From positions 186,001-250,000 of IMG/VR virus record IMGVR_UViG_3300030329_006583: DNA of 64,000 bases. One strand, 5' to 3'. The notes below the pieces were generated by a model. It did not search any database, was not told the DNA's origin, and was given only the letters and a program-made list of their open reading frames with translations. Below, one piece after another: positions 8,432-26,742 of this stretch (position 1 is its first letter; every line of letters starts with the position of its first letter). A program made the position numbers and the translations under genes.

Positions 8432-8648
8432 GTTGGGCCTCTAGTAACCTCTTTATTGATATAACACAATCCCTATAAAGAACATTAATGCTGTCTTCGC
8501 CCTGAAGCTTGTTTAAATGAGGTTTCCAGGCCATATCAATTTCATTTCCATTCACTACAATTGTTTCAATATCACCTTTTTTACGCAGCGCCAATTTATT
8601 TCCTTTAAATTGCTTGCGCAGTGCCGGCATAAAAGCCTTATATTTCAC
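8421..8648 (-). CDS. hypothetical protein
   Basis: 75-aa ORF overlapping the end of cysK. Confidence 0.55.
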   Translation of the reverse strand: MKYKAFMPALRKQFKGNKLALRKKGDIETIVVNGNEIDMAWKPHLNKLQGEDSINVLYRDCVISIKRLLEAQPTQ

Positions 8649-12361: not shown

Positions 12362-12955
12362 TTAATCCTCTTCTACGATGCCTGCTTCTTGTGCAATTTT
12401 TAAAACATCAGCCAGTGCCAAAGCAGCGCTGGCAGGACAATGTGTATCGGTCATTTCCATTACTGGACGAATCATCTCATAAGCTTGTGATGGCTCTAGA
12501 ATAAGGGTGTCTCCGGCACGTTTATAAGAATCTGGGCATATGGCCATTTCGGCATTTTCTTCTTTTATCATCGCAAAATCTGAAAGGATTTCTGGGTTCT
12601 CACAATGCCAATTGACATGTGCAGCATAATCGTCTATTGTAACAATTCCATCCTGATCTAGATCAAAATGGTTATAAAGTTCTTCTGGTGAAAGATTGCC
12701 ATCACCATTCGCGTCGGGTGGCCCATGAGAAGCACCATACGTTTCCGTAATCTCCAGGGTTTCTGGTTCCGGGGTTACTTGTGCGGATCCACCCGCCTCC
12801 GAGTGATCAATGGGTTCCACCAGATCATCTCCACCAGCCCAAGCATTTTCAACAGGTTCAACTTCTGCCGGTGAATCAACATCCCAATATTGGTCGGTTA
12901 AATCTTCAAATTCTTCCTTAATGATTCTTCTAAGTTGTCTTTTTGTAATTTTCAT
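12362..12955 (-). CDS. type-A leader protein with an EF-hand pair
   Basis: MKITKRQLRRIIKEE; loops DANGDGNLSPEE and DLDQDGIVTIDD; start re-assigned. Confidence 0.75.
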   Translation of the reverse strand: MKITKRQLRRIIKEEFEDLTDQYWDVDSPAEVEPVENAWAGGDDLVEPIDHSEAGGSAQVTPEPETLEITETYGASHGPPDANGDGNLSPEELYNHFDLDQDGIVTIDDYAAHVNWHCENPEILSDFAMIKEENAEMAICPDSYKRAGDTLILEPSQAYEMIRPVMEMTDTHCPASAALALADVLKIAQEAGIVEED

Positions 12956-12971
12956 TGTATTTTTCTCCGAC

Positions 12972-13280
12972 TCATATCCCAGGTGACATGATATCATCCA
13001 TCCATGTATCGCGCTCCAAGCCCTGGCGTATACCTTCAATGTACACATACAAGGCGAGCGCCTTGTCATCATCGATGCCATCTTTATACGCAGCATACTT
13101 TTCGCGAACTAGTTTGTCTATGACGCCTAGGTTACGCTCGATTTCGCGCCTTTCGCCGCCATCGCTTTTGTCACCGGTAACCGCCCGGGTCTGTGCTTCC
13201 CAATCGGTACCGAGCTGTTCACTGACTCGGGCAACCTCTTCCTTGATGATTCTTCTTAATTGCCTCTTTGTGATTTTCAT
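12972..13280 (-). CDS. type-A leader protein
   Basis: MKITKRQLRRIIKEE. Confidence 0.8.
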   Translation of the reverse strand: MKITKRQLRRIIKEEVARVSEQLGTDWEAQTRAVTGDKSDGGERREIERNLGVIDKLVREKYAAYKDGIDDDKALALYVYIEGIRQGLERDTWMDDIMSPGI

Positions 13281-13289
13281 TGTTTCTTC

Positions 13290-13586
13290 CTATCGCATGG
13301 GGTCATGCATGTGTACTCGCGTAACAGCCTCACCGACACCACCTTCACTCATATCGATCAAACCAGCCGCGATGGCTTTTACTGTCTCACGCACTGTCGA
13401 GGCCTCTACATCTTTACCGCCCTTCTCCAGGAGCTGCGCCAAAAGTTGCAGATCTTTATGGGCATCGTAAAGGCTCTTGAAAGCATCTTCGTGCACTACC
13501 ACGATGCTACGTGCGTACGCTTCCTTGAGAAACCTCTGCTTCTCTTCCTTGATGATTCTTCTTAACTGTCGTTTTGAAATTTTCAT
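13290..13586 (-). CDS. type-A leader protein
   Basis: MKISKRQLRRIIKEE. Confidence 0.8.
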   Translation of the reverse strand: MKISKRQLRRIIKEEKQRFLKEAYARSIVVVHEDAFKSLYDAHKDLQLLAQLLEKGGKDVEASTVRETVKAIAAGLIDMSEGGVGEAVTRVHMHDPMR

Positions 13587-13587
13587 A

Positions 13588-13908
13588 TTATATCACCTTG
13601 GCCCATTGACCATCGTGAAGTTTATTCTCTACTTTGTCAAAACTGCCATGAATTGCCTGCATTATTTCTTCCACTAGCACATCATAGGCTGTGTCTATCT
13701 GTAGTATCCATTCCTCCCTTGTTGACGAGCCAGCAAACATGTCCGGCTGCTGATCAAACAAAGCTTCTTGGTCCTCAGCCCAAAGGCCGGCTATATTCTC
13801 AACTGCCTCTTTAACCTTTTCCTGATAGTATGGATCGAGCTCTTCACGGAGGAGTTTGGCCCTCTCTTCTTTGATAATTCTTTTCAGTTGTCTTTTAGTT
13901 ATTTTCAT
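13588..13908 (-). CDS. type-A leader protein
   Basis: MKITKRQLKRIIKEE. Confidence 0.8.
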   Translation of the reverse strand: MKITKRQLKRIIKEERAKLLREELDPYYQEKVKEAVENIAGLWAEDQEALFDQQPDMFAGSSTREEWILQIDTAYDVLVEEIMQAIHGSFDKVENKLHDGQWAKVI

Positions 13909-13910
13909 TG

Positions 13911-14378
13911 TTACCATTCCTTACACGACCAATACCGTGCTTTTGTTTTTGGTCCTGGGTTATCACAATTGTGCCGAGCATCAAAGCTCTTTTTGGCTTT
14001 TGGATTACTCTTCCTGATCCTGGAATTCGGATCTCCAAACCTGACGACTGTTACATCGTCCTCTTTGGGGCCGTCCTTCACATATACCTTTTTCTGCTTT
14101 TTACCGTATCCGGTTTGTCCTTTACGGATGGCAGTCGGGTTATTAAGCTTTACTTTTCTGCCTTGGTATTCTGCCTCCTTTAAAGGATCACCCTCTACGC
14201 CATCATCTTCTTGTGCAGCCTTCCACGATTTCTCATCGGGATAGTCCTCATCACCTGGCTTCGCCGGCTTTTCTCCGCGCTTTCTCTTGGCATGAATATT
14301 TGCCCAGAGACCCTTCTTTTTTTCTTCTAAAAAGACTTCTCGAATAATTCCCCTGAGTTGTCGCTTGGTGACTTTCAT
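13911..14378 (-). CDS. type-A leader protein with a basic conserved phage domain
   Basis: MKVTKRQLRGIIRE; KKGLWANIHAKRKR and KSFDARHNC...ARYWSCKEW segments. Confidence 0.8.
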   Translation of the reverse strand: MKVTKRQLRGIIREVFLEEKKKGLWANIHAKRKRGEKPAKPGDEDYPDEKSWKAAQEDDGVEGDPLKEAEYQGRKVKLNNPTAIRKGQTGYGKKQKKVYVKDGPKEDDVTVVRFGDPNSRIRKSNPKAKKSFDARHNCDNPGPKTKARYWSCKEW

Positions 14379-14677
14379 AGTTCCATTTCCTGCAAGACCT
14401 GCATGACCAGCTGCTTGAAAGATTTCATTGGACCAACCCTTTTCTCATCCTCGATGCGCCAGACGATGCGCCTAACATCATAAAGAGACGCTTGAATCGC
14501 GTCTTTAATTGCACCTTCAATTGACGCTATAGGGTAGTCCGTATTTCCGCTCTCGATATCCAATGCCAGGTGATCTAAATCATCGAGCACAGTTTCCATA
14601 TCGCTAACAGACTCGCGGACAAGCTTGGCCTTTTCTTCTTTGATGATTCTTCTTAATTGGCGTTTGGTGATTTTCAT
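14375..14677 (-). CDS. type-A leader protein
   Basis: MKITKRQLRRIIKEE; start re-assigned. Confidence 0.8.
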   Translation of the reverse strand: MKITKRQLRRIIKEEKAKLVRESVSDMETVLDDLDHLALDIESGNTDYPIASIEGAIKDAIQASLYDVRRIVWRIEDEKRVGPMKSFKQLVMQVLQEMEL

Positions 14678-15354
14678 GATTTTATCCCTGTGCACAGTAT
14701 TCCATCATTATCCCACTCTCCCACCGGCCATATTTTCCGCCACTGACCTTCGAGCTCTTGTACACGCCAATCACCACCGGTGTTGTCTATAACAATCTCA
14801 TCATCTATGACGTCGACCAGGATATCGGGCCCAAATATTGGAAGTGCCAAATCGTGCACCTCCTGAGCATCCTGTTCTTGCCATGGTTCAACGTGATGGT
14901 GTGCGATGGCTTCTCTAATAATTCTCTTTAGTTGTCGTTTTGTTATTTTCATTTGTTTTCCCTCAGTTCTTCGACGCATGCCTGAGCGTTTCACCAATTC
15001 TTCCCTGTGTTCCGGATCGGGTTGCATGGCCTTAATTTCTTTATCCCTTGCTGCACGTTCCTCTGCGGCTTTTTCGTATTCTTCCTCTGCTTCCATTGCT
15101 TCATGAGCAGCGTCATATTCTTTGTCGATTTCTTTGGCTATCTGATCAGCTGTCATAGTAGCAAACATATGTTGCATGGTGTCGCCGGATGGCCTCACAC
15201 CCCACCTGTATTTGTATGCATCAGAAAACATACCAAGCAAATCATCCTTCTTTTCGGAATCCTCATCGGTAAAGGGTGCAAGAGGAGAATCAACGCCTAA
15301 CGATCGCTGTGCTTCCCTAATGATTCTTTTTAGTTTCTGTTTTGTGATTTTCAT
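14674..15354 (-). CDS. protein with two type-A leaders (N-terminal and internal at 14952)
   Basis: MKITKQKLKRIIRE, then in-frame MKITKRQLKRIIRE preceded by GAGGG. Confidence 0.8.
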   Translation of the reverse strand: MKITKQKLKRIIREAQRSLGVDSPLAPFTDEDSEKKDDLLGMFSDAYKYRWGVRPSGDTMQHMFATMTADQIAKEIDKEYDAAHEAMEAEEEYEKAAEERAARDKEIKAMQPDPEHREELVKRSGMRRRTEGKQMKITKRQLKRIIREAIAHHHVEPWQEQDAQEVHDLALPIFGPDILVDVIDDEIVIDNTGGDWRVQELEGQWRKIWPVGEWDNDGILCTGIKS

Positions 15355-15713
15355 TACATGTCCTCCAGGATTGATTCCGCCGTATCCAATGGGGCTCGTA
15401 CTTTCTCGCCTGCCAAGCCAAGATCATAGGTGAGATCTTTCAATTTGTCTATCGCCATACGAAGAGCATTGGGATTCTGATCGTAGACTACATCTTCAAA
15501 GTCAACATCAGATTCCAGATCTTCAAATGCCTCCCACCCTTTGATCAGGGCATCCACTTGCTCCTGAACCGCAGTACCTAGACTGGCATACGCCTTGGCA
15601 AAAGCGATAAGGGGATCGGAAGGAGAGTCTCCACCAAACCCAAATTGTTCATTGAGGAGCTTGGCTTTCTCTTCCTTGATGATTCTTTTCAATTGTCGTT
15701 TTGTGATTTTCAT
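15354..15713 (-). CDS. type-A leader protein
   Basis: MKITKRQLKRIIKEE. Confidence 0.8.
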   Translation of the reverse strand: MKITKRQLKRIIKEEKAKLLNEQFGFGGDSPSDPLIAFAKAYASLGTAVQEQVDALIKGWEAFEDLESDVDFEDVVYDQNPNALRMAIDKLKDLTYDLGLAGEKVRAPLDTAESILEDM

Positions 15714-15728
15714 TGTTAATTCCTATAA

Positions 15729-16094
15729 TCAGCTCGTAACATATCTCACAGTAGGCGGTGTAGCCGGAACAGCCGTACTATTTTGGGCCGCGGCAGTTAC
15801 ACACCAATGACTGAAACCTGTACTAAACGCAATCCCCTCGGGAAATGCATAACTTCTTTTTACAGATGCAGGACAAAGGAACACCATAGAAGCAGCAGTT
15901 GTCCCGGCCGTAGCGCTAGTAGCGTCAGCTAGTTTAAAATAGACGGCCGTACTATATCCTGTGTTGTCAATCTCCACCATATACAGTGTACCTGCCGCGC
16001 CTGTTGTGTTTTCTACTGCGGTGGCCGCCGCCGCTGTATCCTGAACCAATTTATTAGCTAATGGATTGCTTTGATTAGTAACTGTAACTGCCAT
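15729..16094 (-). CDS. A/T-rich beta protein, probably a virion component (no leader)
   Basis: 121 aa, Ala/Thr-rich; GGAGG SD. Confidence 0.65.
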   Translation of the reverse strand: MAVTVTNQSNPLANKLVQDTAAAATAVENTTGAAGTLYMVEIDNTGYSTAVYFKLADATSATAGTTAASMVFLCPASVKRSYAFPEGIAFSTGFSHWCVTAAAQNSTAVPATPPTVRYVTS

Positions 16095-16147
16095 AACTTA
16101 ATACCCTCCGCCGATTGTAAATAGAAACATGCTTTTTGTAATTTTCA

Positions 16148-16465
16148 CTACCCTATGCTCCCACCCGGATTTCTGCCCACTAATTCGTCCACTGTCACAA
16201 AATAGGCCTCAAGTTGTTTAAAGAAACTATTTAATCTCTCAACTTGCATCCCAAGATCCACAGCCAGTTCATCCCCCGCTTGCACACCCGGCTCACTAGG
16301 ATCTTGAAGACCATATATGCCATTTGCAATTTCCTCAATAGAAGATGCAATACCATCTAGTTCTGCCATCATTGAACCTTCAGTGGAAGCCATAGACTGT
16401 TCTTTTATCAACTTTGTTTTTTCTTCTTTTATGATTCTTCTAAGCTGTCTTTTTGTGATTTTCAT
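16148..16465 (-). CDS. type-A leader protein
   Basis: MKITKRQLRRIIKEE; start re-assigned. Confidence 0.8.
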   Translation of the reverse strand: MKITKRQLRRIIKEEKTKLIKEQSMASTEGSMMAELDGIASSIEEIANGIYGLQDPSEPGVQAGDELAVDLGMQVERLNSFFKQLEAYFVTVDELVGRNPGGSIG

Positions 16466-16466
16466 T

Positions 16467-16679
16467 TTATAGCTCGCCATGTTTAAAGTCTTCCAGAGCC
16501 TCTAAGGCATCGGCACCAGTCATCCAATTTCCCACCAGATAATTAACCAGCTGTTCAGCTGAAACGCCCATCATTTCGAGTTCTTCTAAAATTGCAAAAG
16601 CAGCCTGGCGATTCTCGTTTAAGAGCTTCGACTTCTCTTCCTTAATGATTCTTTTCAATTGTCGTTTTGTAATTTTCAT
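16467..16679 (-). CDS. type-A leader protein
   Basis: MKITKRQLKRIIKEE. Confidence 0.8.
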   Translation of the reverse strand: MKITKRQLKRIIKEEKSKLLNENRQAAFAILEELEMMGVSAEQLVNYLVGNWMTGADALEALEDFKHGEL

Positions 16680-16703
16680 CTTAGTTTCCTTTATTAATAT
16701 TCA

Positions 16704-17048
16704 TTAATCAGCAGTGTGACGATAATAATCCACTTTTACCGACATCCCATCATCCGTCACTGTGTGAGTGTACACCCCTGAAAGTGCGGCATACGGATCC
16801 TTCTTTTGTTGTATTTCAAGATTATTGAAAACATCAACATCACCTTGAGGGATGGGCTGCCCGTCTTTGCGAACATATACCTGTGTACTCCTCACATCAC
16901 CACGATTACGACCATACGGATAACTTACCGAACCACTACCAACAGTCTCATAATGTTGATCCAATAAATCCCGATGTTGAGACCATATATTTTCCTGCAA
17001 AAGTGCTTCCTTAATTATACCTCGCAACTGAGGGATTGTGATTAACAT
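16704..17048 (-). CDS. type-A-like leader protein
   Basis: MLITIPQLRGIIKEALLQE; AGGAG SD. Confidence 0.7.
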   Translation of the reverse strand: MLITIPQLRGIIKEALLQENIWSQHRDLLDQHYETVGSGSVSYPYGRNRGDVRSTQVYVRKDGQPIPQGDVDVFNNLEIQQKKDPYAALSGVYTHTVTDDGMSVKVDYYRHTAD

Positions 17049-17050
17049 TA

Positions 17051-17554
17051 TCAGCTCCTGCGATCCCGAGTGCCCCATCTCCCATAGGAATCATCACGCC
17101 TATCACGATAACTCTGTTTTTTGCCTGACTCAGCACCGGTACGCATACCCAATGATTCATCCTCTTTATCATCATATCCCTGGTGGCCTTCTTCCATATC
17201 GTCCTCTGCCAGGTTTTCTTCAACCAATTGGCGAATTCGTTGGCGTAAAGCGGCCTGCTTATTTAATTTCGCTTTTTCTTCTTTTACTATTTGGCGCAGC
17301 TGCCTCCTACCCAAGGCTCGGCCTCGGCGGCGACGAGACTCATGTTTTTCTCTTTCATGTTCCAGCTCTTCTTCGTGAGCGCGCTCCATCTCTTCCCGAT
17401 CATCCTTAATGTCTTTCTCAAGATTATCAATATGATCCTTGTCATCATCAATGTTTTTACGAAGATTATCCAGCTCATCACTGATGCTATCCTCGGCAAG
17501 GCGCCGAACTTCTTCCTTTACGATTTTTCTCAATTGTCTCTTTGTGATTCTCAT
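17051..17554 (-). CDS. type-A leader protein, highly charged coiled coil
   Basis: MRITKRQLRKIVKEE plus internal RRQLRQIVKEE. Confidence 0.75.
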   Translation of the reverse strand: MRITKRQLRKIVKEEVRRLAEDSISDELDNLRKNIDDDKDHIDNLEKDIKDDREEMERAHEEELEHEREKHESRRRRGRALGRRQLRQIVKEEKAKLNKQAALRQRIRQLVEENLAEDDMEEGHQGYDDKEDESLGMRTGAESGKKQSYRDRRDDSYGRWGTRDRRS

Positions 17555-17844
17555 CCTCTCATTCTCCTTGCCATTCCCAGCTGTTGTCCCACATTTTGCG
17601 CATCAACAGTATCCCCTTGATCCAAATCCTGTTGGCGCTGTTGTGTTAATTTCTTAACTTGATCCGCCGAGGCTTGTTCCTCGTCGACATCATCTCCACT
17701 TAATGAAGTATCCATTCCCATGTCACCCACGGCAAGAAAACCTTCATCATCATCACTTTTCTCCTGGGGGGCTGTATAACCCACAACCTGTTCCCGCAGA
17801 ATCTCCCTTATTACATTTCGCAATCTGTACTCTGTAACTCTCAT
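17551..17844 (-). CDS. type-A-like leader protein
   Basis: MRVTEYRLRNVIREILREQ. Confidence 0.7.
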   Translation of the reverse strand: MRVTEYRLRNVIREILREQVVGYTAPQEKSDDDEGFLAVGDMGMDTSLSGDDVDEEQASADQVKKLTQQRQQDLDQGDTVDAQNVGQQLGMARRMRG

Positions 17845-18152
17845 GCAGTTGTCACCCTACCTATTAACATCATACTGTCACCCTCCGTATCGCCACCTAT
17901 AATTACGGAGCGTATCTTTTGGCACAATCCCTTTACCCATTCTTTCAAACCCAATCGTTTTGTGGGTACCGGAATTTGCATACATTGTTTGGTATAGGCT
18001 TTCATAATAAAACGGGCGGCCAAACGAGAACCATATTTTTTAGCAATTACATGAACAATTTGTTGGGTTTTTGGGTTTAACTCAACAAACATCTCACGTA
18101 ATTCTGACCTGGTTGGCAATTGCCTGTTTTTCATTTTATTCACCGTAATCAC
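17841..18152 (-). CDS. hypothetical basic protein
   Basis: 103-aa ORF inside the array, no clear leader. Confidence 0.5.
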   Translation of the reverse strand: MITVNKMKNRQLPTRSELREMFVELNPKTQQIVHVIAKKYGSRLAARFIMKAYTKQCMQIPVPTKRLGLKEWVKGLCQKIRSVIIGGDTEGDSMMLIGRVTTA

Positions 18153-18387
18153 TTATCAACTCGCTGGCATTTTGTTTGCGGGCCCTATCTGCTGCGGCTT
18201 GTAAAAAATCAGCCATAGTAATACCAGCTAACGCCGGTGCTTGTTCCACCGAGATGTCATCGCGTACTAGTCGAATGGCCTCATCTAAATACATGTGGAA
18301 AATATCGGTAACATGATCCCGAGCTGCCTCAGTGTTAAATTGTTCATGAATTATTTTTTGAAGTTGTTTACGAGTAATTTTCATCAT
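18136..18387 (-). CDS. type-A leader protein
   Basis: MMKITRKQLQKIIHEQ; GAGG SD. Confidence 0.75.
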   Translation of the reverse strand: MMKITRKQLQKIIHEQFNTEAARDHVTDIFHMYLDEAIRLVRDDISVEQAPALAGITMADFLQAAADRARKQNASELISDYGE

Positions 18388-18554: not shown

Positions 18555-18662
18555 TTATTGCCCTGTAATCTTCTTAAGCTGGGCCATACACCATTTTAGG
18601 CCAACCCATGCAAAAGGGGCCACCACGGAACCCACAAGGGCACCCCACATAAACTCTGTCAT
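18555..18662 (-). CDS. 35-aa membrane peptide (not in the ORF track)
   Basis: MTEFMWGALVGSVVAPFAWVGLKWCMAQLKKITGQ; strong AGGAGG SD; followed by a terminator. Confidence 0.65.
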   Translation of the reverse strand: MTEFMWGALVGSVVAPFAWVGLKWCMAQLKKITGQ

Positions 18663-18728: not shown

Positions 18729-19559
18729 TTACGCCGGCTTACCAAACCCATCTTCACTTGCATTAACAATGTGGTGATTGAGTTCATAGGCATGATTTAA
18801 TATTTCATCCGCATATCTCTCTATGCGGTTCACCAAAGATACGGGAACACCGCGTTCAAATAATCCGGTTTTCCCCAATCTCTCTACCACCGCATCTGTT
18901 ACATCATTGACCCGACGTGAATGTAACATATCGGATTCTAAATTTTCCTTTAATAAACCCTTTATGACACTTCGCAATAAGGATTCATTTTGACTATCTT
19001 CTACAACCTCCAATATAGCCCTCCAGTGACTTGGGCTAATACCGGAAGGTATTCCACCACTTGCAGATTGTAAAGCCATGAGTGCATCCCCGTATTTCTT
19101 TATTTGCCGTGGACTGGGATTGCTGAGAAGGTTGTGCAACATATCTGCCAATTTTACCTTTAGCGATGCCGAATCTCCCAATAAGGACAATACATAATCC
19201 TGATACGGCACATTCTTTTCATGGGTCAATTGACGTACCACACGTAATGCCTCCCGCCCGGATTGCACATCCCCGAATGAAGCGGTGATCATTGAGCTCA
19301 GATCCTCTGAGGATTTTATATTCCCTAATTCAATTGCATCTTCGAGGGTATCATGTAAAAGAGCAATTGCGCATAGTGTTTGATCCTCTGGGTAGTATTT
19401 TTCTATTATCTTAGCAACGGCCATGGGATGCTCAATATAGGGTTCCCCACTGCGCCTAGTTTGTCCTAGGTGTGCTAGCTGTGCCGTTGCCATGGCATCA
19501 TCAACATCGGCGCTAGCCATACCACAAATTTCACTAATATATTGGCGCAATAGTTTCAT
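18729..19559 (-). CDS. HD-domain hydrolase of the RelA/SpoT hydrolase (Mesh1/SAH) type, with a type-B leader
   Basis: AH.GQ.R.SGEPYIEHP, ALLHDTLED, VKLADMLHNL; N-terminal MKLLRQYISE. Confidence 0.8.
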   Translation of the reverse strand: MKLLRQYISEICGMASADVDDAMATAQLAHLGQTRRSGEPYIEHPMAVAKIIEKYYPEDQTLCAIALLHDTLEDAIELGNIKSSEDLSSMITASFGDVQSGREALRVVRQLTHEKNVPYQDYVLSLLGDSASLKVKLADMLHNLLSNPSPRQIKKYGDALMALQSASGGIPSGISPSHWRAILEVVEDSQNESLLRSVIKGLLKENLESDMLHSRRVNDVTDAVVERLGKTGLFERGVPVSLVNRIERYADEILNHAYELNHHIVNASEDGFGKPA

Positions 19560-20581
19560 CCTTCAATCTCCGGTATACCTGTTATCCTGTGACCGGGTCG
19601 GACCCCATTCCTTTTAAACCAACCGCGGTTCATCTCCAATGCGCATCGGGCAGGGCCATTCGAATAAGTATGTTCCTCCGTGAAGGGTTCCATGTCCTCA
19701 ATGTTTAAAATATACCCATCATCATCCGTATACGCAATAGACAAGGGGAGAGGTGTGTTCCTCATCCAGAAAGATCTTTGATTAGAATCTGGAAAAACAA
19801 ACAGCATCCCGCTATCTTCCCCCATCCCGCGACGGAACATTAGGCCCTGTTGACGAGTGGCAGGGGTTGAAGCAATCTCAGTATCGACCTGTATGCCATT
19901 TACCATCACCCCCTCAGACAATGTTGTAGTTGTTTTGGTTGCGTACCTGACCTCACCCTCATAGATGAACTCATCAACCTGATTAAACCCCAACCCCTGC
20001 GCTTCTCCCAATATCTCAACTTCAGCCATGCACTCATTTCGAGCACCACCCACCAAATCAGCGCCATTCCACTTTGGTAATTCATCTTCTAAATCGGGAA
20101 CCCAAAAACCATAGTCTTCAAGCTCGTCAAACAGAAGCTCGCTAACACCAATCGCTTCTACGTCTTCTTCTTCCAGCTCCTGGATATCTCGGATGTCTTT
20201 ATCAATCATGTACTTAACAATCTCTACAATCGATGATCGATCAAAACACACACTTGAATCCATCACGTCTCGAAAGAAACCGTAGCCCTTATCGAAGAAA
20301 GTTGATTTTGATAGCAATTCATCGTATGTCTCTTCATCCCAATCCAACTTTTCAAAGTAAAAGTCTTTCAAGGCAGACTCTGATATCATACCGAGCGTGT
20401 CTTCACCGTTATAAAGAAATAGCACACGGGAATAATTCTCTGCTGCCTCACGAAGCATATCACCGATATCAAAAGGAGTGTTGCTTTCGTACTCAGGCTG
20501 GATATCTACTACGACAAGACTGCCTTTCGATCCCTGCTCTTGCTCTAGCAATACCCTTATGTATTCGCGGAGTAGTTTCAT
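19556..20581 (-). CDS. fusion of type-B leader, cysteine-hydrolase-like domain and DUF192 domain
   Basis: LVVVDIQPEY...VGGARNEC; C-terminal GLMFR...GMLFVF...FWMRNTPLPLSI. Confidence 0.7.
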   Translation of the reverse strand: MKLLREYIRVLLEQEQGSKGSLVVVDIQPEYESNTPFDIGDMLREAAENYSRVLFLYNGEDTLGMISESALKDFYFEKLDWDEETYDELLSKSTFFDKGYGFFRDVMDSSVCFDRSSIVEIVKYMIDKDIRDIQELEEEDVEAIGVSELLFDELEDYGFWVPDLEDELPKWNGADLVGGARNECMAEVEILGEAQGLGFNQVDEFIYEGEVRYATKTTTTLSEGVMVNGIQVDTEIASTPATRQQGLMFRRGMGEDSGMLFVFPDSNQRSFWMRNTPLPLSIAYTDDDGYILNIEDMEPFTEEHTYSNGPARCALEMNRGWFKRNGVRPGHRITGIPEIEG

Positions 20582-21021
20582 TTTTCTGGAACCCCCAATA
20601 GCTTTTCACATTCATCAGCCAAAATACTCAATTTTAGGGCGGTCAACCTGACATGTTCAATGAAACCCCTTTGGTGAAATGTTTTCCATGCCTGGTGATT
20701 ATCTGATTTCATGCGGTCAAAAATCTTATCGATACCAAGGGCATTACACAAAGAAAAGGAAAACTGAAATGCTGCCTCGCTGTAATCTTCATCCCTAAGT
20801 GCCAACAGACCTTTCTCTGCCGATCTTTTTACTTCACCATATAAAAGTGATACACATTCTGGATTATTTTTAATTTCGCAGGTAAGATTAGGCGAACATG
20901 CCCTGTACTCTAGTTCTCCAAAATACTCGATGGTTACCTGCGTATTGCCTTCCAGGTAATTAGTTTTGGGAGTGCAGGAACAAAAAAGTAGCAACAGCGT
21001 TATTAGTAAAGCCCTTATCAT
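20578..21021 (-). CDS. putative lipoprotein
   Basis: MIRALLITLLLLFCSC lipobox-like N-terminus. Confidence 0.55.
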   Translation of the reverse strand: MIRALLITLLLLFCSCTPKTNYLEGNTQVTIEYFGELEYRACSPNLTCEIKNNPECVSLLYGEVKRSAEKGLLALRDEDYSEAAFQFSFSLCNALGIDKIFDRMKSDNHQAWKTFHQRGFIEHVRLTALKLSILADECEKLLGVPEK

Positions 21022-21048: not shown

Positions 21049-21402
21049 TCACCATGGCCCGTGTTGACCCGTCTTCAAACAGTTAACCACCGTTTCCTCG
21101 GCAGTATATTCCCGTCGGATTTCGGGCTGGAACATGTCATAATAAATATCACGTGGAATTCCTTCTGGCTTGGTATAACTTGACTGCCAGTCAAACACAG
21201 TGTCACCTTTCTCCACCCACGCATGATCCACAGTTTCCCCAGAGAACTTATCAGTGACCTGCCCATGCACCACCTTAAACTTGGAAAGATCGCTGAATTC
21301 TTCATCTGTGGTACCCTGGGCCATCTTTATTGCGTGTGGATAGCATTGGCCGATTGCTTTTTCCACTAGTAAGGCTCTTATGTACTCACGCAATAGATTC
21401 AC
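21049..21402 (-). CDS. type-B leader protein with Cys/His motifs
   Basis: MNLLREYIRALLVE; GQCY, VVHG and HAWVE suggest a papain/transglutaminase-like core. Confidence 0.65.
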   Translation of the reverse strand: MNLLREYIRALLVEKAIGQCYPHAIKMAQGTTDEEFSDLSKFKVVHGQVTDKFSGETVDHAWVEKGDTVFDWQSSYTKPEGIPRDIYYDMFQPEIRREYTAEETVVNCLKTGQHGPW

Positions 21403-22007
21403 TTTATCACCCCGGCCGAAGCAAAATCTACAATGTTAATCCCCAGCCCTTCGGTTTCTTCAGACACAACAGACATCAAGTTATCCGGAACCATTATCTC
21501 CTTAATTGACCAATTGTCAACCAAGGCTTCGTTAGCAGAACCAGGAATAAAATCTTTGGAATCAAGAACAAGAAAACCGGGTGACAACAACTCATCCATG
21601 TCATGATAGGTACCTTTGTTTACCCCAGAAGACTGTGCCCTATGTTCTCCTCCTACCCTAGCCGCCGTGGACCCATATCCCGTATTTAGATCCTCATTTG
21701 ATAATAGGGTTATCCTTCCATCGATAACCAACCCGACCATAGAAAGCTCATAGCTTTCTGGGTTTATCTGCCCTGGCAAATAAGCTCGAACACTCAATTC
21801 ATTTCTGGAACCTACGTTAATTGTTTGCATTAATTTTTGTGGCCTAACCCAATGAACTGTTACTAGCGAGTCAAGAAACTGTTGGTCAGCATTCTTTGCG
21901 TAATACTGCTTTATTTCCCGACCGGTTTTTAGAGCTAACAAATCACGCTCATCTGCTTCGGCAGTTTCGACCAACAATTCCCTTATATATTCACGTAGTA
22001 ATTTCAT
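21399..22007 (-). CDS. type-B leader protein
   Basis: MKLLREYIRELLVE. Confidence 0.75.
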   Translation of the reverse strand: MKLLREYIRELLVETAEADERDLLALKTGREIKQYYAKNADQQFLDSLVTVHWVRPQKLMQTINVGSRNELSVRAYLPGQINPESYELSMVGLVIDGRITLLSNEDLNTGYGSTAARVGGEHRAQSSGVNKGTYHDMDELLSPGFLVLDSKDFIPGSANEALVDNWSIKEIMVPDNLMSVVSEETEGLGINIVDFASAGVIK

Positions 22008-22291
22008 TTCTTGCCCCTGATCTTAACCCATGTGCCCCACATTAACGGAACAGCTAACCAATGCAAGCATAATAACCATGCTGCAGGAGCACCGGCATAA
22101 AAAGATGGATGAACTGTCTTTCCCAAGAATATGAAGAGAGCGGGAAACCCAACGTCTTCAATAATTTCCCACAACAAGAATATGACAACGAATGCCAGAC
22201 CGTTCTCTTTGAGAAAGCCTTTTAATTTCTCAATAGAAAAATGCTCAAATTTATGAACTAGGCGATCTTTTGTCCACTGAAATAACTTCAT
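22004..22291 (-). CDS. 2-TM membrane protein
   Basis: Hydrophobic segments; overlaps both neighbours. Confidence 0.6.
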   Translation of the reverse strand: MKLFQWTKDRLVHKFEHFSIEKLKGFLKENGLAFVVIFLLWEIIEDVGFPALFIFLGKTVHPSFYAGAPAAWLLCLHWLAVPLMWGTWVKIRGKK

Positions 22292-23139
22292 TAATAATAT
22301 TTTGCCCCCATAACATTAACATCAGGATACTGCTTTTCCATCTTTTCTTTCAGATGGCCTATCGCGGGGGTCATCATCTTCCCAAAGTCAATAATGCTAG
22401 CAGGCTTTGCATACATGCTGAAAAACTTGTCAACAAGCCGGGTCGCTACTTTTTGGCCACCTTTATCTCCCCGGGTTTTCATATAATCAATATACCAGTA
22501 ATCCGGCCCTCGTTGGTGATAATCTAAAAACCCGATGATGCAAACGTCGCTCACCCCTGGGATTATCTCATCTAGCACTGGTTTTTTAAGTTTTCTTCTG
22601 CCACCCTTTGTACGTTTTCGCCACCTTTCAATTTCTGCGAAATAGTGATCATGAGGCCTCGGGGGATCTGTGACAGAAGAATCACATAAGGCCAAACGTT
22701 TCACATTGCCAGAACTGTGATATTGGAGCGGAGAATCAACTTCACGGAACTCAATTCCCTCTGTCAAAATTCCCCTGACAACTTGACGTACAGACTCTTT
22801 CGCATGGGGTGTATCGTTAATCGTTTTAAGCTTGGCCATGTCAACACCAGAAATGCCGGTCAGATCAGCAATCAGATCATCTATGGTATAACCATCACCT
22901 CGCTCAAACCGAACCACCAGATCGGCCATCTGCTTTCCTTCAGGTGCAGGACGAAGCGAAGCATCCTGGCGCACCGTTATCACATCCGGCAGTCCCCGAA
23001 TCTTTGTGAGAATGTGTTCCATGGTAGGCTTATCAGGAGAATCAATGCTGACTCGCACTGTTACGGAGAGATCATCTAACACTGGTTCAGCAGCCGTTTG
23101 TTCCAATAAGCCCCTTATGTACTCGCGTAGTAGTTTCAT
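22291..23139 (-). CDS. type-B leader protein with a GNAT-like C-terminus
   Basis: MKLLREYIRGLLEQ; GFLDY...YIDYMKTR...GQKVATRLV. Confidence 0.65.
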   Translation of the reverse strand: MKLLREYIRGLLEQTAAEPVLDDLSVTVRVSIDSPDKPTMEHILTKIRGLPDVITVRQDASLRPAPEGKQMADLVVRFERGDGYTIDDLIADLTGISGVDMAKLKTINDTPHAKESVRQVVRGILTEGIEFREVDSPLQYHSSGNVKRLALCDSSVTDPPRPHDHYFAEIERWRKRTKGGRRKLKKPVLDEIIPGVSDVCIIGFLDYHQRGPDYWYIDYMKTRGDKGGQKVATRLVDKFFSMYAKPASIIDFGKMMTPAIGHLKEKMEKQYPDVNVMGAKYY

Positions 23140-24218
23140 TACCATTCCCCCGCTTGTTTGGCCCTGGTACGCATGTGTTCCGGAGTCAATGTGTTAGGAA
23201 ATGTCTTAACTACATCGACTGCACCCTTCGATAAAAAGATCGCCTGCTGTGGTTCATTTTTGTGAATCAAGCCGGTACTGCGATCATAAAAGGCGTCCAT
23301 ACCGATCCCTCTCAATATGGCGTTCCACTTTCCAATAGGGGCAGCTGCCTTATCACCGGCACCTGGACTCCCACCTGCTATCATCTTTGTCAATAGCCAT
23401 ATGAGATCAATAGGCCTCTTTCGGGCTTTCTTTTGTGCCTCTTCATATATGGCAGAATTTCTCATGATCGCCGTTATGGGATTAATTCCTTGGGCCACAG
23501 CCTCCTCTACCTTCTGCACCTCATCTTCAAATGAGGTACCTGATAAACCAAATCTCTCCACGGTTTCCTGTGTATACAATTGTTTCATCGCATCATATTG
23601 CTCTGAAAGTGTGAACTCAGGTGACGTCACCAAATTTGCTCCTGCGCTGGTTTTTAATATTGAAATGAAAGGTTGTTGTGTAGCAAAAGGCAATCGTTCA
23701 GAACCTTTAGGCGAAGTAAGTTGTTGAACTGTTTTGGGAAAGAGGGGGTAAGCATAAATTCCGGCGGGTGTGTTATAATCAGAGCCGGGGTTGACACCCA
23801 CCTTATTAATGGCTGTGAAAGTAATATAATATTCCGGCTTTTCCGATGAATTCCCATCGGCATATGATTGCAATTCATTTTCAAGGGTAGGAAGTTCCAC
23901 ACCTTCTTTATCGGCACGACGGGCCTCAGCCAATGTCATTTGTATATACTTGCGCAAGAGCTTCTCATTCATCTTTCCTGTCATCCTCTCCAACATGTCC
24001 ATGGCCTCTTCCCTGGTTACAAAGTAATCACCCTCAATGGTGTAGGGTTTCTCTGAGCCATCAGGTAGAATATAACCTGTACCCACATAAAACCCGTTGG
24101 AATTTTGCATCACCTGTAATTCTGTGGGACCAAATCCTGGCCGGTGCGGCTTGGGCGACCCTGCCTTTTGAAGTAAAGAATTTCTAAACCACTTAATTTG
24201 AAAACCCTTTGGCCACAT
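23139..24218 (-). CDS. hypothetical protein with a type-B leader at 23972 (possible true start)
   Basis: Internal MNEKLLRKYIQMTLAE; KVGVNP.S.YNTPAGIYAYP. Confidence 0.6.
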   Translation of the reverse strand: MWPKGFQIKWFRNSLLQKAGSPKPHRPGFGPTELQVMQNSNGFYVGTGYILPDGSEKPYTIEGDYFVTREEAMDMLERMTGKMNEKLLRKYIQMTLAEARRADKEGVELPTLENELQSYADGNSSEKPEYYITFTAINKVGVNPGSDYNTPAGIYAYPLFPKTVQQLTSPKGSERLPFATQQPFISILKTSAGANLVTSPEFTLSEQYDAMKQLYTQETVERFGLSGTSFEDEVQKVEEAVAQGINPITAIMRNSAIYEEAQKKARKRPIDLIWLLTKMIAGGSPGAGDKAAAPIGKWNAILRGIGMDAFYDRSTGLIHKNEPQQAIFLSKGAVDVVKTFPNTLTPEHMRTRAKQAGEW

Positions 24219-24231
24219 AACCTATCCTTCC

Positions 24232-24567
24232 TTACGCAGAAAAAGACGTTCCACACCCACATGTGGAAGTAGCATTGGGGTTACTAAATTCAAACCCGCT
24301 TCCGTTCAGCCCACCTGACCAATCCAGAACGGTGCCAATCAAAAATAAGTAGCTCTTTTTGTCTACATATAACTTAATTCCGCTCTCAGACGTGTATACC
24401 TTATCACCTTCTTGAATCTCAGTTTCCAATTCCAAGTTATAAGACAAACCTGCACAACCCCCACCTTGTACACCCACCCTTATTCCGTTAGCAGTAGAAT
24501 TTTCACGTTCCATGATCTTACGAATCTGTGTTTCTGCATCCGGTGTTATCTCAATGGTTGGTTTCAT
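24232..24567 (-). CDS. iscA: Fe-S cluster A-type carrier (IscA/HesB)
   Basis: GVQGGGCAGLSY and CGCGTSF motifs. Confidence 0.92.
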   Translation of the reverse strand: MKPTIEITPDAETQIRKIMERENSTANGIRVGVQGGGCAGLSYNLELETEIQEGDKVYTSESGIKLYVDKKSYLFLIGTVLDWSGGLNGSGFEFSNPNATSTCGCGTSFSA

Positions 24568-24940
24568 TCTTTTCTCTCCAATCTTTGATTGCAGCCTTGA
24601 TGGCATCCTCCGCCAACACGGAACAATGAATCTTGATGGGTGGCAAATTCAATTCCTCGACAATCTCCACGTTTCTTATCTTTTCGGCATTGTCAACTGT
24701 CATTCCCTTTACCCACTCGGTCGCCAGTGAACTAGCGGCAATCGCACTCCCACAACCAAAAGTCTTGAATTTGGCATCTTCAACAATGCCTTCATCATTT
24801 ACCTTGATTTGCAATTTCATAACATCACCACATTCAGGAGCACCGACCAAACCGGTGCCCACTGTAGTGTCTGTTTTATCCATTGATCCAACGTTCCTGG
24901 GATTTTTGTAATGTTCAAGCACTTTATCTGAGTATGCCAT
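24551..24940 (-). CDS. iscU: Fe-S cluster scaffold IscU
   Basis: YSDKVLEHYKNPRNVG, GAPECGDVM, KTFGCGSAIA, LPPIKIHCSVL. Confidence 0.95.
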   Translation of the reverse strand: MAYSDKVLEHYKNPRNVGSMDKTDTTVGTGLVGAPECGDVMKLQIKVNDEGIVEDAKFKTFGCGSAIAASSLATEWVKGMTVDNAEKIRNVEIVEELNLPPIKIHCSVLAEDAIKAAIKDWREKNETNH

Positions 24941-24942
24941 TT

Positions 24943-25302
24943 TTAGCTCTTGAGTTTTCTACCTGGTCTTGTTGCATGCTCATGTGTTTTTGATGCTGCC
25001 GCTTCAACCATTCTGGCGGGCACGTTCTTGAGCGTTTTCTTGCCGAACACAATATCATAATGGCCAATGGCACCGTTCCTGTCAAGACTATGCCACACAA
25101 TTTTACCCACCCTTTTAGCCGGGATCCCATATGCCTCCTGCAAAGCTGAAGACTTCAGCTTACCATGTGTCAGTCACGTGTGCCCGATCAATTCTTCCTC
25201 TTCGGGATCCAACTCCGCTTGTTCCATACCTGACCCGAATGGTGCAGCTTTCTTCAATTCTTCTTTAATAATTTGCCTAAGTTGTCTCTTCGTAATTTTC
25301 AT
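24943..25302 (-). CDS. candidate selenoprotein: type-A leader, in-frame TGA at codon 43 (25174-25176)
   Basis: Manual translation MKITKRQLRQIIKEE...LIGHT(TGA)LTHGKLKSSALQEAYG...KTHEH...; the frame stays open for 76 sense codons after the TGA; hairpin 3' of the TGA. Confidence 0.7.
25143..25161 (-). promoter_or_regulatory. candidate bacterial SECIS hairpin
   Basis: AAGCUGAA-GUC-UUCAGCUU: 8-bp stem, loop starts with GU, 20 nt after the UGA. Confidence 0.6.
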
Positions 25303-25704: not shown

Positions 25705-26742
25705 TCACTTAGAATAATTAATGTGAGTAGAACTTTCAATTGCACCATTAGGTGTCTGGCGAATGAATTGGGCCCGGGCATGAAGATGTGAAATGGAATT
25801 AGCACCGGTATAAGAAAGACCTGAACGAATACCCACGGAAATTGTTTGTACAATATCGGCCAAAGGACCTTTCATTGGGATTATTGTGGCTACCCCTTCA
25901 ATAGAATTAGCGCGTCCCCGCCAATCATATTGTGCCTCGACAGACGCCATACCCCGATAGGCTTTATATGCAGTGCGCACCGAATGACCATCCACTACCT
26001 CAGATTTCTCAATAACAGCGCCCGGAGATTCAGGGGTACCGGCCAACATAGAGCCTAACATCACACAATCAGCTCCGGCAGCCAAGGCCTTCACAATATC
26101 GCCACTATTCCTAATACCTCCGTCAGCAATAAGCAGGACATTAGCATCAGCGCTAGCACAATCCATAACTGATTGCAAAGTTGGCATGCCGTGACCGGTT
26201 TGAATACGAGTGCTACATATCGATCCTCCGCCAATGCCAATCCTGACGCTATCTGCACCCCAATCGGCCAAATCCTCTACCGCTGTGCGGCTAGCCACAT
26301 TTCCTGCCATGATGTGCACCTTAGATCCTAAAACCTCCCTCAATTTAAGGAGGGCACGTTTCATGCGCACATGATGACCGTGAGCAACATCAACACAAAT
26401 CACCTTAGCACCATAGCTAACGAGAGCCCCAGCACGAGAAACATAATCTCCTGTTACCCCTACCGCAGCCCCACATATTGCCCCACTAGCCACAATTTTT
26501 TTCACCATATCAAATTGTGTTTGTGGGCTATTATATCGATGTACAATACCGAGTCCCCCCAACCTACTGATTTCGACTGCCGTATCCACACCTGTTACAG
26601 TGTCCATGGGGCTTGAAATAATAGGTAATTTCAAAACGCCAACCTTGGGAATTTCTACACTAAGATCCACCTCTGTCCGGCTCTCAATAGCTGAATACTG
26701 GGGGGCTAAAAGAACATCGTCAAAACAAACTGTTTCCCTCAT
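25705..26742 (-). CDS. IMP dehydrogenase / GMP reductase family protein (no CBS domains)
   Basis: [33 protein letters not shown] (catalytic Cys), ADGGI, YRGMAS. Confidence 0.9.

What the first reader, a model, noticed from the sequence alone, without database searches (positions are those of the whole stretch)
18729..19559. Leader-tagged alarmone hydrolase-like HD protein
Motifs AH.GQ.R.SGEPY.EHP, HD..ED and KLAD..HN match the RelA/SpoT hydrolase (Mesh1/SAH) family, and no synthetase domain is present. Inference: if packaged, it could degrade (p)ppGpp or (p)ppApp at infection and so counter the stringent response or toxSAS-type defence. In myxobacteria ppGpp also triggers development.
Basis: partly seen in the sequence, partly recalled or inferred. 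Interest (0 to 1): 0.6.

Follow-up and report, generated by a model that had tools for sequence, protein, structure and literature searches.

The report
Leader-tagged phage alarmone hydrolase
An uncultured marine T4-like giant phage encodes a ppGpp-hydrolase-type enzyme behind a short leader shared with about 30 unrelated neighbouring genes; the leader resembles phage T4's capsid-targeting signal, so the enzyme is probably packed into the virion and injected with the DNA.

Summary
Window 18729-19559 (minus strand) is a 276-aa ORF with an intact RelA/SpoT-type hydrolase domain: Pfam HD_4 is above its cut-off, all catalytic motifs are present, and the AlphaFold model matches Rel, RelH, MESH1 and Aph1. 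The held 267-kb contig has no synthetase domain. The contig is a marine T4-like phage with a gp23 capsid protein and a gp21-type prohead protease.

The first ten residues, MKLLRQYISE, belong to a leader that heads four neighbouring genes of unrelated sequence. A related leader heads about 15 more. The leader has the register of the T4 capsid-targeting sequence MKTYQEFIAE and ends in I-x-E. The same motif recurs inside ORFs at module junctions, including residues 194-205 of this protein. In two other phages the orthologous enzyme carries the other leader type and also sits inside a tagged-gene cluster.

Best reading, at about 0.5 confidence: a small alarmone hydrolase that is loaded into proheads, trimmed by the prohead protease and injected. 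Packaging and enzyme activity are inferred, not shown. Phage alarmone hydrolases and T4 targeting leaders are each known; their combination is a new variant. The myxobacterial host idea has no support.

The parts
18729..19559 (-). Whole ORF of 276 aa plus stop: leader, alarmone-hydrolase domain, internal junction and a small C-terminal module.
19530..19559 (-). N-terminal leader, residues 1-10 (MKLLRQYISE). It ends in I-S-E and is followed by the I-C-G conserved in the family. It is the putative capsid-targeting propeptide and prohead-protease site.
   Evidence: Shared with ORFs starting at 20581, 21402, 22007 and 23139. Same register as T4 ipII/ipIII MKTYQEFIAE. Leaderless orthologues exist.
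18981..19514 (-). RSH-type HD hydrolase domain, residues 16-193. Family-invariant residues include H30, R35, H44, H69-D70, E73-D74, D139 and N143.
   Evidence: HD_4 and TIGR00691 matches. Invariant columns in a 45-sequence alignment. AF2 block pLDDT 93-98 across this region. Foldseek hits to Rel, RelH, MESH1 and Aph1. Alignment to T. thermophilus Rel.
18945..18980 (-). Internal leader-like junction, residues 194-205 (LLRSVIKGLLKE), a putative second processing site.
   Evidence: Hit by the strict pattern and by the type-B leader profile at E 8.7e-7. Equivalent junctions follow the HD module in L040, L021, P0107 and P0024.
18732..18944 (-). C-terminal 71-aa helical module of unknown function, residues 206-276. 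It was seen only here and in the 85%-identical relative P0001.
   Evidence: AF2 block pLDDT 57-76. Other homologues cover only 62-80% of the query. The word search found no stand-alone relative.
19556..20581 (-). Upstream type-B-tagged gene of 341 aa: leader, unknown domain, then DUF192. Its stop overlaps the HD start. The pair is conserved in relatives.
21049..24218 (-). Rest of the type-B leader cluster. Tagged ORFs are 21049-21402, 21399-22007 and 22291-23139. ORF 23139-24218 has an internal junction near 23960.
12362..18387 (-). Type-A leader cluster: about 14 small ORFs that start MKITKRQL(R/K)RIIKEE. One more lies at 25174-25302.

Best explanation
The gene encodes a small alarmone hydrolase, that is, a stand-alone RelA/SpoT-type, Mn-dependent 3'-pyrophosphohydrolase. 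It belongs to a clade seen so far only in uncultured marine T4-like phages. Its first ten residues are a capsid-targeting and processing leader of the phage T4 internal-protein kind. The proposed course is as follows. The precursor is made with the head proteins. The amphipathic leader takes it into the prohead core. The gp21-type prohead protease cuts after I-S-E10, and probably again at the internal junction at residues 194-205. The mature enzyme of about 21 kDa stays in the head and enters the cell with the DNA. There it removes the 3'-pyrophosphate from (p)ppGpp, (p)ppApp or pyrophosphorylated tRNA ends before any phage gene is expressed. That would lift stringent-response shutdown in starved marine hosts or disarm toxSAS-type abortive infection. 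Shown here: the fold, the catalytic motifs, the shared leader, the T4-type protease and capsid, and the modular exchange of leaders. Inferred: packaging, cleavage, injection, substrate and benefit.
For: Enzyme evidence:
- HD_4 is above its cut-off and spoT_relA matches at E 2e-16.
- The best solved relatives by sequence are Rel/SpoT hydrolase domains, with T. thermophilus Rel at 2.9e-12.
- The AF2 model has pLDDT 88, and the top Foldseek hits are Rel, RelH, MESH1, Aph1 and PaSAH at probability 1.00.
- The catalytic residues are invariant in 45 homologues.
- No synthetase domain was found.

Leader evidence:
- The contig has Peptidase_S77 (E 1.8e-27) and Gp23 (E 1.1e-64).
- The leader is shared by proteins with no other detectable similarity, with varied codons at conserved residues, which points to selection on the peptide.
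- It has the same length, the same M-K start, an aromatic at position 7 and I-x-E at positions 8-10, as in T4 ipII/ipIII.
- T4 leaders of this kind load diverse internal proteins and are removed by gp21 (PMC7411985, PMC3012670).
- The two small proteins encoded just after the protease gene have N-termini that resemble the type-A leader. The capsid protein has V-L-R-E|Q where T4 gp23 is cut.
- The motif also occurs inside ORFs exactly at module boundaries. Modules that are separate genes here are fused in relatives (L004 912-aa ORF, P0088, P0024, P0086, L040, L021).
- In contigs G001 and G002 the orthologous enzyme carries a type-A-like leader and sits inside runs of 5-20 tagged genes.
- Leader presence changes at least 11 times on a tree of 144 domains, including a regain inside a leaderless clade.
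- All 10 tested contigs that carry the family have the prohead protease.

Precedent for the role: phage SAHs of PVP-SE1 and SSU5 neutralise all tested toxSAS toxins (PMC7229694).
Against: - There is no virion proteome, no cultured relative and no RNA data.
- The HD leader departs from the type-B consensus after position 8 and lacks the E at position 14.
- AF2 models residues 2-12 as a confident helix. Long RSH enzymes have an N-terminal 'helix 0' (PMC10083569), so part of the leader could be an integral structural element.
- Many family members carry only a short L-K-K-Y-I-x-E-I-C-G extension in loci with few other tagged genes.
- SAHs of cultured T4-like Aeromonas phages and of PVP-SE1 have no leader, so packaging is not needed for a phage SAH to be useful.
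- The tagged cluster is not next to the head genes, and no late-promoter signal was found.
- Identity to the T4 leader is only 4 of 10 residues, plus two conservative matches.
Confidence: 0.5

Rival explanations
1. The protein is an ordinary cytoplasmic phage alarmone hydrolase, expressed after infection like the SAHs of PVP-SE1, SSU5 or Aeromonas T4-like phages. Its N-terminal helix would be part of the fold, or a tag with a role other than encapsidation, such as oligomerisation, binding to a shared partner, or turnover.
For: Leaderless orthologues and leaderless SAHs in cultured phages evidently work. AF2 gives the first helix pLDDT 87. Long RSH enzymes have an N-terminal helix 0. There is no direct evidence of packaging.
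Against: The first nine residues match four neighbouring genes of otherwise unrelated sequence at 7 or 8 of 9 positions. The domain folds without the leader in 26-33 of 144 relatives. Orthologues carry either leader type. The only known system with this logic in T4-type phages is the capsid-targeting sequence.
Confidence: 0.25
2. The motif is a polyprotein processing and linker signal, cut in the cytoplasm by a phage or fused zincin peptidase. It would release co-expressed effector modules, as proposed for 'polyvalent proteins', with no link to the capsid.
For: Internal junctions lie between modules. Some HD homologues are fused to HExxH modules, namely P0023/P0024 (Peptidase_M48) and P0086. 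The polyvalent-protein precedent with processing metallopeptidases is in PMC5512222.
Against: Most tagged genes are single small ORFs that start with the motif, where no release is needed. Pfam scans of about 25 window ORFs returned no peptidase family. The motif ends in the [L/I]-x-E preferred by gp21-type proteases, which every tested contig encodes. Polyvalent proteins are themselves thought to be packaged.
Confidence: 0.15
3. The HD domain does not act on alarmones. It would hydrolyse another phosphorylated nucleotide, for example NADPH as MESH1 does, or a defence second messenger.
For: MESH1 has the same fold and is an NADPH phosphatase (one search lists its NADPH and PAPS complexes). Specificity cannot be read from sequence (PMC12846349). 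Frequent linkage or fusion to NUDIX suggests wider nucleotide chemistry.
Against: Sequence is closest to Rel/SpoT hydrolase domains, with the full R-x-S-G-E-P-Y-x-x-H-P, H-D-x-x-E-D and K-x-A-D-x-L-H-N motifs. All characterised bacterial and phage members hydrolyse 3'-pyrophosphorylated nucleotides.
Confidence: 0.1

Closest known systems
Phage T4 internal proteins IPI-III and Alt with their capsid-targeting sequence (CTS)
   Same: [quoted passage not shown] Both end in [L/I]-x-E at about residue 10. Cargo genes are clustered and highly variable between relatives.
   Different: T4 tags about four proteins, whereas this phage tags about 30. There are two leader types of about 14 residues. The motif also occurs internally, joining modules into polyprotein-like ORFs. 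The cargo includes enzymes such as the alarmone hydrolase and, in relatives, NUDIX, a CCA-adding enzyme and a zincin peptidase. Packaging is not shown.
Phage-encoded small alarmone hydrolases (Salmonella phage PVP-SE1 PbcSpo, SSU5 PaSpo) and the SAH antitoxin ATfaRel
   Same: All are single-domain RSH hydrolases encoded by a phage, with the same fold and catalytic motifs. The proposed role, degrading alarmones and neutralising toxSAS, is the same (PMC7229694).
   Different: Identity to the PVP-SE1 enzyme is only about 30%. The sequence is closer to long Rel/SpoT hydrolase domains. The PVP-SE1 and Aeromonas T4-like phage enzymes, whose sequences were read here, have no leader. The close clade was found only in marine viral contigs and metagenomes.
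MuF-fused (p)ppApp synthetase toxins and RelA/SpoT-containing polyvalent proteins of phages
   Same: These are alarmone-metabolising RSH enzymes thought to travel in the phage head and to act at the moment of DNA entry (PMC10083569, PMC5512222).
   Different: They carry the synthetase domain and make alarmones, whereas this protein carries the hydrolase domain and would remove them. They are targeted by a MuF or portal-associated domain, not by a short cleavable leader.
MESH1, RelH, PaSAH and Aph1 (cellular small alarmone hydrolases)
   Same: The fold matches, with TM-scores normalised to the target of 0.68-0.75.
   Different: These are cellular enzymes with 17-24% identity. Aph1 has 8 helices, whereas this model has a long-RSH-like 10-11 helices.

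Membership tests
RSH superfamily hydrolase domain (Pfam HD_4; Rel/SpoT/MESH1/SAH) | Profile match above the curated threshold | tested here: met
   HD_4 scores 32.9 bits against a cut-off of 27.2. TIGR00691 matches at E 2.2e-16 over the hydrolase part only.
RSH superfamily hydrolase domain (Pfam HD_4; Rel/SpoT/MESH1/SAH) | Metal-binding and catalytic motifs are present: H...HD...D plus the ED dyad, R of RxSGEPY and N of LHN | tested here: met
   H30, R35, H44, H69-D70, E73-D74, D139 and N143 are present and invariant in 45 homologues. The motif blocks ah.gq.rrsgepyi.hp, llhdtled and vklad.lhnl are identical in T. thermophilus Rel.
RSH superfamily hydrolase domain (Pfam HD_4; Rel/SpoT/MESH1/SAH) | All-helical HD fold superposable on solved members | tested here: met
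   The AF2 model has pLDDT 88. Foldseek gives probability 1.00 to Rel, RelH, MESH1, Aph1 and PaSAH.
RSH superfamily hydrolase domain (Pfam HD_4; Rel/SpoT/MESH1/SAH) | Hydrolysis of the 3'-pyrophosphate of (p)ppGpp or (p)ppApp | not testable with these tools
   This needs an enzyme assay.
Small alarmone hydrolase (stand-alone RSH hydrolase) | No synthetase or regulatory C-terminal domains in the polypeptide | tested here: met
   Only HD_4 and HD were found. PF04607 is absent from the ORF and from the held contig.
Small alarmone hydrolase (stand-alone RSH hydrolase) | Assignment to a named SAH subfamily (PbcSpo, PaSpo, Mesh1 and others) | tested here: inconclusive
   Identity to PVP-SE1 (PbcSpo) is 30%. 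The best sequence matches are long-RSH hydrolase domains. No subfamily HMMs were available.
T4-type capsid-targeting-sequence (CTS) cargo proteins | The phage encodes a gp21-type prohead protease and a gp23-type capsid | tested here: met
   Peptidase_S77 matches at E 1.8e-27 and Gp23 at E 1.1e-64.
T4-type capsid-targeting-sequence (CTS) cargo proteins | A short N-terminal peptide shared by otherwise unrelated proteins | tested here: met
T4-type capsid-targeting-sequence (CTS) cargo proteins | The propeptide ends in [L/I]-x-E within 10-20 residues | tested here: met
   The HD protein has I-S-E at residues 8-10. Type-A leaders have I-K-E at 12-14 and type-B leaders have L-x-E at 12-14. That gp21 prefers this motif is my own knowledge.
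T4-type capsid-targeting-sequence (CTS) cargo proteins | Sequence homology to the T4 CTS itself | tested here: inconclusive
   MKLLRQYISE against MKTYQEFIAE gives 4 identical and 2 conservative positions of 10. This is too short for statistics.
T4-type capsid-targeting-sequence (CTS) cargo proteins | The protein is found processed in the virion and ejected | not testable with these tools
   There is no cultured relative and no proteome. A protease-leader complex prediction gave no verdict.
Polyvalent (multi-effector, packaged) phage proteins | Several unrelated effector domains in one polypeptide, with a processing peptidase | tested here: inconclusive
   Here there is only the HD domain plus a 71-aa module. 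Homologues are fused to HExxH, NUDIX, PAP2 and unknown modules, with junction motifs between them.

The most novel reading that the evidence does not exclude
A clade of uncultured marine T4-like giant phages has expanded the T4 capsid-targeting principle into a general cargo system. Two interchangeable 14-residue leaders would also serve as cleavable junctions in polyproteins. They would load about 30 different proteins per genome into the head. The cargo would include a ready-made kit of an alarmone hydrolase and, in relatives, a NUDIX hydrolase and a CCA-adding enzyme. Once injected, the kit would erase alarmone signalling and repair pyrophosphorylated or damaged tRNA ends at time zero of infection. 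This would be the first injected anti-stringent or anti-toxSAS enzyme.
Probability: 0.35. Interest if true: 0.8.

Novelty: new variant of a known kind. Interest (0 to 1): 0.62.

Why it matters
Phage alarmone hydrolases are thought to counter ppGpp- or toxSAS-based shutdown, but a gene-encoded enzyme acts only after transcription and translation. Those are the very processes such defences block. An enzyme delivered pre-made with the DNA would solve that timing problem. It would be especially useful in nutrient-starved marine hosts, where ppGpp levels are expected to be high (a general assumption, not tested here). The leader also offers a sequence tag for predicting, from genomes alone, which proteins of uncultured T4-like giant phages are virion cargo. 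That would open about 30 unknown proteins per genome to targeted study. The recurring link between the hydrolase, NUDIX and CCA-adding enzyme suggests a testable tRNA-end and alarmone repair module.

Tried and rejected
- **DNA searches of the phage collection.** Megablast with 8 kb of the window and blastn with the capsid region found nothing. Only protein-level relatives exist.
- **CCA-adding enzyme (PF01743).** It is absent from the held contig, although it is linked to the hydrolase in relatives.
- **Promoter, terminator and T4 late-promoter (TATAAATA) scans.** They gave nothing above shuffled expectation.
- **Rfam scan of the 340-nt gap after the gene.** Only chance-level hits were found.
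- **Word search with the C-terminal module, residues 199-276.** No candidates were found. This says nothing about longer or fused relatives.
- **Literature search for the leader strings.** No papers were found.
- **Sequencing-run search.** Only marine DNA runs hold the stretch and none is on record as RNA.
- **Complex prediction of the prohead protease with residues 1-40.** It gave no verdict, with score 0.00. This is not evidence either way.
- **Pfam and PHROGs on other tagged ORFs.** Only sub-threshold hits (EF-hand, Mu-like_Pro) and unannotated PHROGs were found.
- **Myxobacterial host.** Rejected for lack of any support.
- **'Integral helix 0' as the sole explanation of the N-terminus.** Rejected because leaderless orthologues exist and unrelated neighbours share the peptide.
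- **Large representative-protein search.** Not run, because the family was already clear.

Full report
**What is there**

Window 18729-19559 (minus strand) is a 276-aa ORF. Its ATG overlaps the stop codon of the upstream gene as ATGA.
- AHLGQTRRSGEPYIEHP at residues 29-45
- HDTLED at residues 69-74
- KLADMLHN at residues 136-143

Profile searches agree on the family:

| Library | Model | Result |
|---|---|---|
| Pfam | HD_4 | 32.9 bits, cut-off 27.2 |
| NCBIfam | TIGR00691 spoT_relA | E 2.2e-16, N-terminal hydrolase part only |
| PHROGs | phrog_990, metal-dependent phosphohydrolase | E 2.4e-28 |

Against solved structures, the best sequence matches are the hydrolase halves of long Rel/SpoT enzymes, with T. 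thermophilus Rel at E 2.9e-12. Stand-alone hydrolases RelH, MESH1 and Aph1 match more weakly.

An AlphaFold model built on 45 homologues has mean pLDDT 88, with block means of 93-98 over residues 11-190. Foldseek returns only RSH hydrolases at probability 1.00: Rel, RelH, MESH1, SpoT, Aph1 and PaSAH. In the 45-sequence alignment the metal-binding and catalytic residues H30, R35, H44, H69-D70, E73-D74, D139 and N143 are invariant. The held contig has no RelA_SpoT synthetase domain and only this one HD_4 copy. By every test available here, the protein is a stand-alone, apparently catalytically competent alarmone-hydrolase-type enzyme.

**Where it lives**

The window is part of a 267,118-bp linear IMG/VR viral contig that CheckV estimates at 78% complete. 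It encodes a T4 gp21-type prohead protease (Peptidase_S77, E 1.8e-27) and a gp23-type major capsid protein (E 1.1e-64).

By capsid protein, the nearest records are:
- an uncultured 484-kb phage, LR756508, at 49.7% identity
- Flavobacterium phage vB_FspM_immuto at 44.7%
- Microcystis phage Mel-JY01 at 44.9%

The DNA is held only by marine and seawater metagenome runs. Nothing points to a myxobacterial host.

**The leader**

Five genes between 18729 and 23139 start M-(K/N)-L-L-R-(E/Q)-Y-I, which I call type B. About 15 small genes at 12362-18387, and one at 25174-25302, start M-K-I-T-K-R-Q-L-(R/K)-R-I-I-K-E-E, which I call type A.

- Downstream of the leader, these proteins show no detectable similarity to one another.
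- Conserved residues are encoded by varied codons; for example, leucine 8 uses six different codons. The peptide, not the DNA, is therefore under selection.
- A strict type-B pattern gives 8 hits in the genome and none in 20 codon shuffles.
- Leader profiles give 26 type-A and 9 type-B hits, with E-values down to 6e-12.
- Both types share one architecture: M-K, hydrophobic residues at positions 3, 8, 11 and 12, an arginine or lysine at position 9, and a glutamate at position 14.

The hydrolase's own leader, MKLLRQYISE, follows type B for eight residues and then ends I-S-E at positions 8-10. That is the same register as the T4 capsid-targeting sequence MKTYQEFIAE of ipII and ipIII, which I read directly from the T4 genome.

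In T4, such 10-20-residue propeptides take the internal proteins and Alt into the prohead core and are then removed by gp21. The cargo is diverse and only the leader is conserved (PMC7411985, PMC3012670, PMC5694885). That gp21 cuts after [L/I]-x-E is my own knowledge. The T4 gp24 (MAKINELLRE), gp22 (MLKEQLIAE) and gp23 (...FLTE|AEIGG) sequences read are consistent with it.

**The phage's own head proteins fit**

- Its capsid protein has V-L-R-E|Q-S-S about 27 residues before the conserved V-R-R motif, near where T4 gp23 is cut.
- The two small proteins encoded just after the protease gene occupy the position of prohead core proteins. They begin M-A-K-L-S-R-K-M-L-K-S-L-V-K-E and M-A-K-K-T-K-L-T-P-A-L-L-K-K-L-V-L-E-E-K-K-K, which resemble the type-A leader.

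**The motif is also a junction**

Residues 194-205 of the hydrolase protein (LLRSVIKGLLKE) match the type-B profile at E 8.7e-7. They separate the enzyme from a 71-aa C-terminal module found only here and in the 85%-identical relative P0001.

ORF 23139-24218 has a similar internal site. In the close relative L004, window genes that are separate here are fused into one 912-aa ORF with a leader-like motif at each seam. L004 also has a single tagged ORF that holds a CCA-adding enzyme and a NUDIX domain joined by such a motif.

Homologues of the hydrolase show the same plan:
- leader, HD, junction, unknown module: L040, L021 and P0107
- leader, HExxH peptidase, junction, HD, junction, tail: P0024
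- leader, HELEH module, junction, HD: P0086
- the N-terminal module of window ORF 23139-24218 joined directly to the HD: P0088

A motif that heads single genes and also sits at every seam of fused genes is best explained as a proteolytic processing site.

**Comparative support**

The close family, at 40-85% identity, has hundreds of members in marine metagenomes and IMG/VR contigs. In one genome per prokaryotic species, the best matches are at most 39% identical and are ordinary Rel/SpoT genes. In 50,697 phage records the best match is at most about 37% identical.

All ten tested viral contigs that carry the family encode the gp21-type protease. In contig G002 the orthologue carries a type-A-like leader (MKIAKYQLRKFIRES) and lies between type-A-tagged genes and a run of about ten type-B-tagged genes. 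In G001 it starts MKVSRKLIREILLEK and is embedded among at least 17 type-A genes.

On a FastTree of 144 domains, leader presence changes at least 11 times. A well-supported leader-bearing subclade is nested inside a mostly leaderless clade. The leader is therefore a transferable add-on that the fold does not need.

By contrast, the SAHs of cultured T4-like Aeromonas phages and of PVP-SE1 have no leader. The PVP-SE1 enzyme has been shown to neutralise toxSAS toxins.

**Function**

Phage SAHs of PVP-SE1 and SSU5, like the antitoxin ATfaRel, neutralise every toxSAS tested. Incoming phages have been proposed to use such enzymes against alarmone-mediated abortive infection (PMC7229694). Phages are also thought to package alarmone synthetases, as MuF fusions and polyvalent proteins (PMC5512222, PMC10083569). 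No paper found here describes a packaged hydrolase.

In several other marine T4-like contigs the hydrolase, a NUDIX hydrolase and a CCA-adding enzyme are adjacent, and each begins with a leader-like N-terminus. HD-NUDIX fusions also exist. This suggests, by inference only, a common task on pyrophosphorylated nucleotides and tRNA 3' ends. Substrate preference cannot be read from the sequence (PMC12846349).

**Weighing**

The enzyme assignment is firm at about 0.9. The reading of the leader as a T4-like capsid-targeting and cleavage signal is well supported by context, but it is indirect, and I put it at about 0.6.

The reservations are these:
- There is no proteome and no cultured relative.
- The hydrolase's leader diverges from the consensus after position 8.
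- AF2 models the leader as a confident helix, which could be the helix 0 of long RSH enzymes.
- The cluster is not next to the head genes, and no late promoter could be recognised.
- A protease-leader complex prediction gave no verdict.

Overall confidence in the combined statement is about 0.5. Each half, phage SAHs and T4 capsid-targeting leaders, is already known. The combination, and the scale and polyprotein use of the leader system, make this a new variant of a known kind.

**Procedural notes**

No alternative genetic code was used. 

Noticed in passing
window 12362-18387 and 25174-25302 (minus strand); also genome C1:179.8-182.3 kb, just before the window: There is a tandem array of about 15-20 small genes of 42-226 aa, mostly acidic. 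All start MKITKRQL(R/K)RIIKEE and show no other detectable similarity. This looks like a greatly expanded internal-protein locus. ORF 14674-15354 carries the leader twice.
   Followed up: partly
window 19556-20581 (minus strand): A type-B-tagged 341-aa protein has an unknown 230-aa N-terminal part and a C-terminal DUF192 domain (E 1.7e-31). It is translationally coupled to the hydrolase, and the pair is conserved in three related contigs.
   Followed up: partly
L004:1082-3820 and L004:5252-6982; window 23139-24218: Genes that are separate in the window are fused in a close relative into a 912-aa ORF, with a leader-like motif at each seam. A tagged CCA-adding-enzyme-NUDIX fusion is present there but absent from the window. 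An 85-aa 'MWPKG...' module always sits first and has no leader of its own. In P0088 it is joined directly to the hydrolase.
   Followed up: partly
L006, L008, L011, L014, L015 (other marine T4-like contigs): The gene trio of HD hydrolase, NUDIX and CCA-adding enzyme is conserved, and each member has a leader-like N-terminus. It lies next to DUF444-SpoVR-PrkA, HSP20 and a ResIII helicase.
   Followed up: partly
window 18555-18662 (minus strand): A conserved 35-aa hydrophobic ORF (MTEFMWGALVGS...) lies in the 340-nt gap after the hydrolase and is also present in L004. In the window only, it is followed by a stem-loop plus T-run that looks like a terminator.
   Followed up: partly
window 20578-21021 and 22004-22291 (minus strand): Two untagged genes sit inside the type-B cluster. 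One is a 147-aa protein with a lipoprotein-like signal (…LLLLFCSC…). The other is a 95-aa protein whose sequence shows long hydrophobic stretches (not tested with a membrane-topology tool).
   Followed up: no
window 7622-8431 (plus strand), 49633-50856 (minus strand); genome C1:~136.5-136.8 kb (minus strand): Further type-B-like tagged ORFs of 269, 407 and about 103 aa lie outside the main cluster. One is on the opposite strand. No family was assigned.
   Followed up: no
window 8638-9549, 24232-24940, 25705-26742, 26848-27477, 30805-31839: The window holds auxiliary metabolic-type genes: a PLP-dependent (cysteine-synthase-like) enzyme, a gene next to the tagged cluster whose homologues in L004 match NifU_N (IscU) and Fe-S_biosyn (IscA), an IMPDH/GMP-reductase family enzyme, a PP-loop ATPase and a full DnaJ.
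   Followed up: no
LR756508.1 (published 484-kb uncultured phage), about 143-220 kb: There are 16 weaker type-A leader matches clustered around its capsid gene at 171.9 kb. The leader system therefore extends to a deposited huge-phage genome. That phage's own HD protein, at 84.6 kb, is a distant leaderless type.
   Followed up: partly
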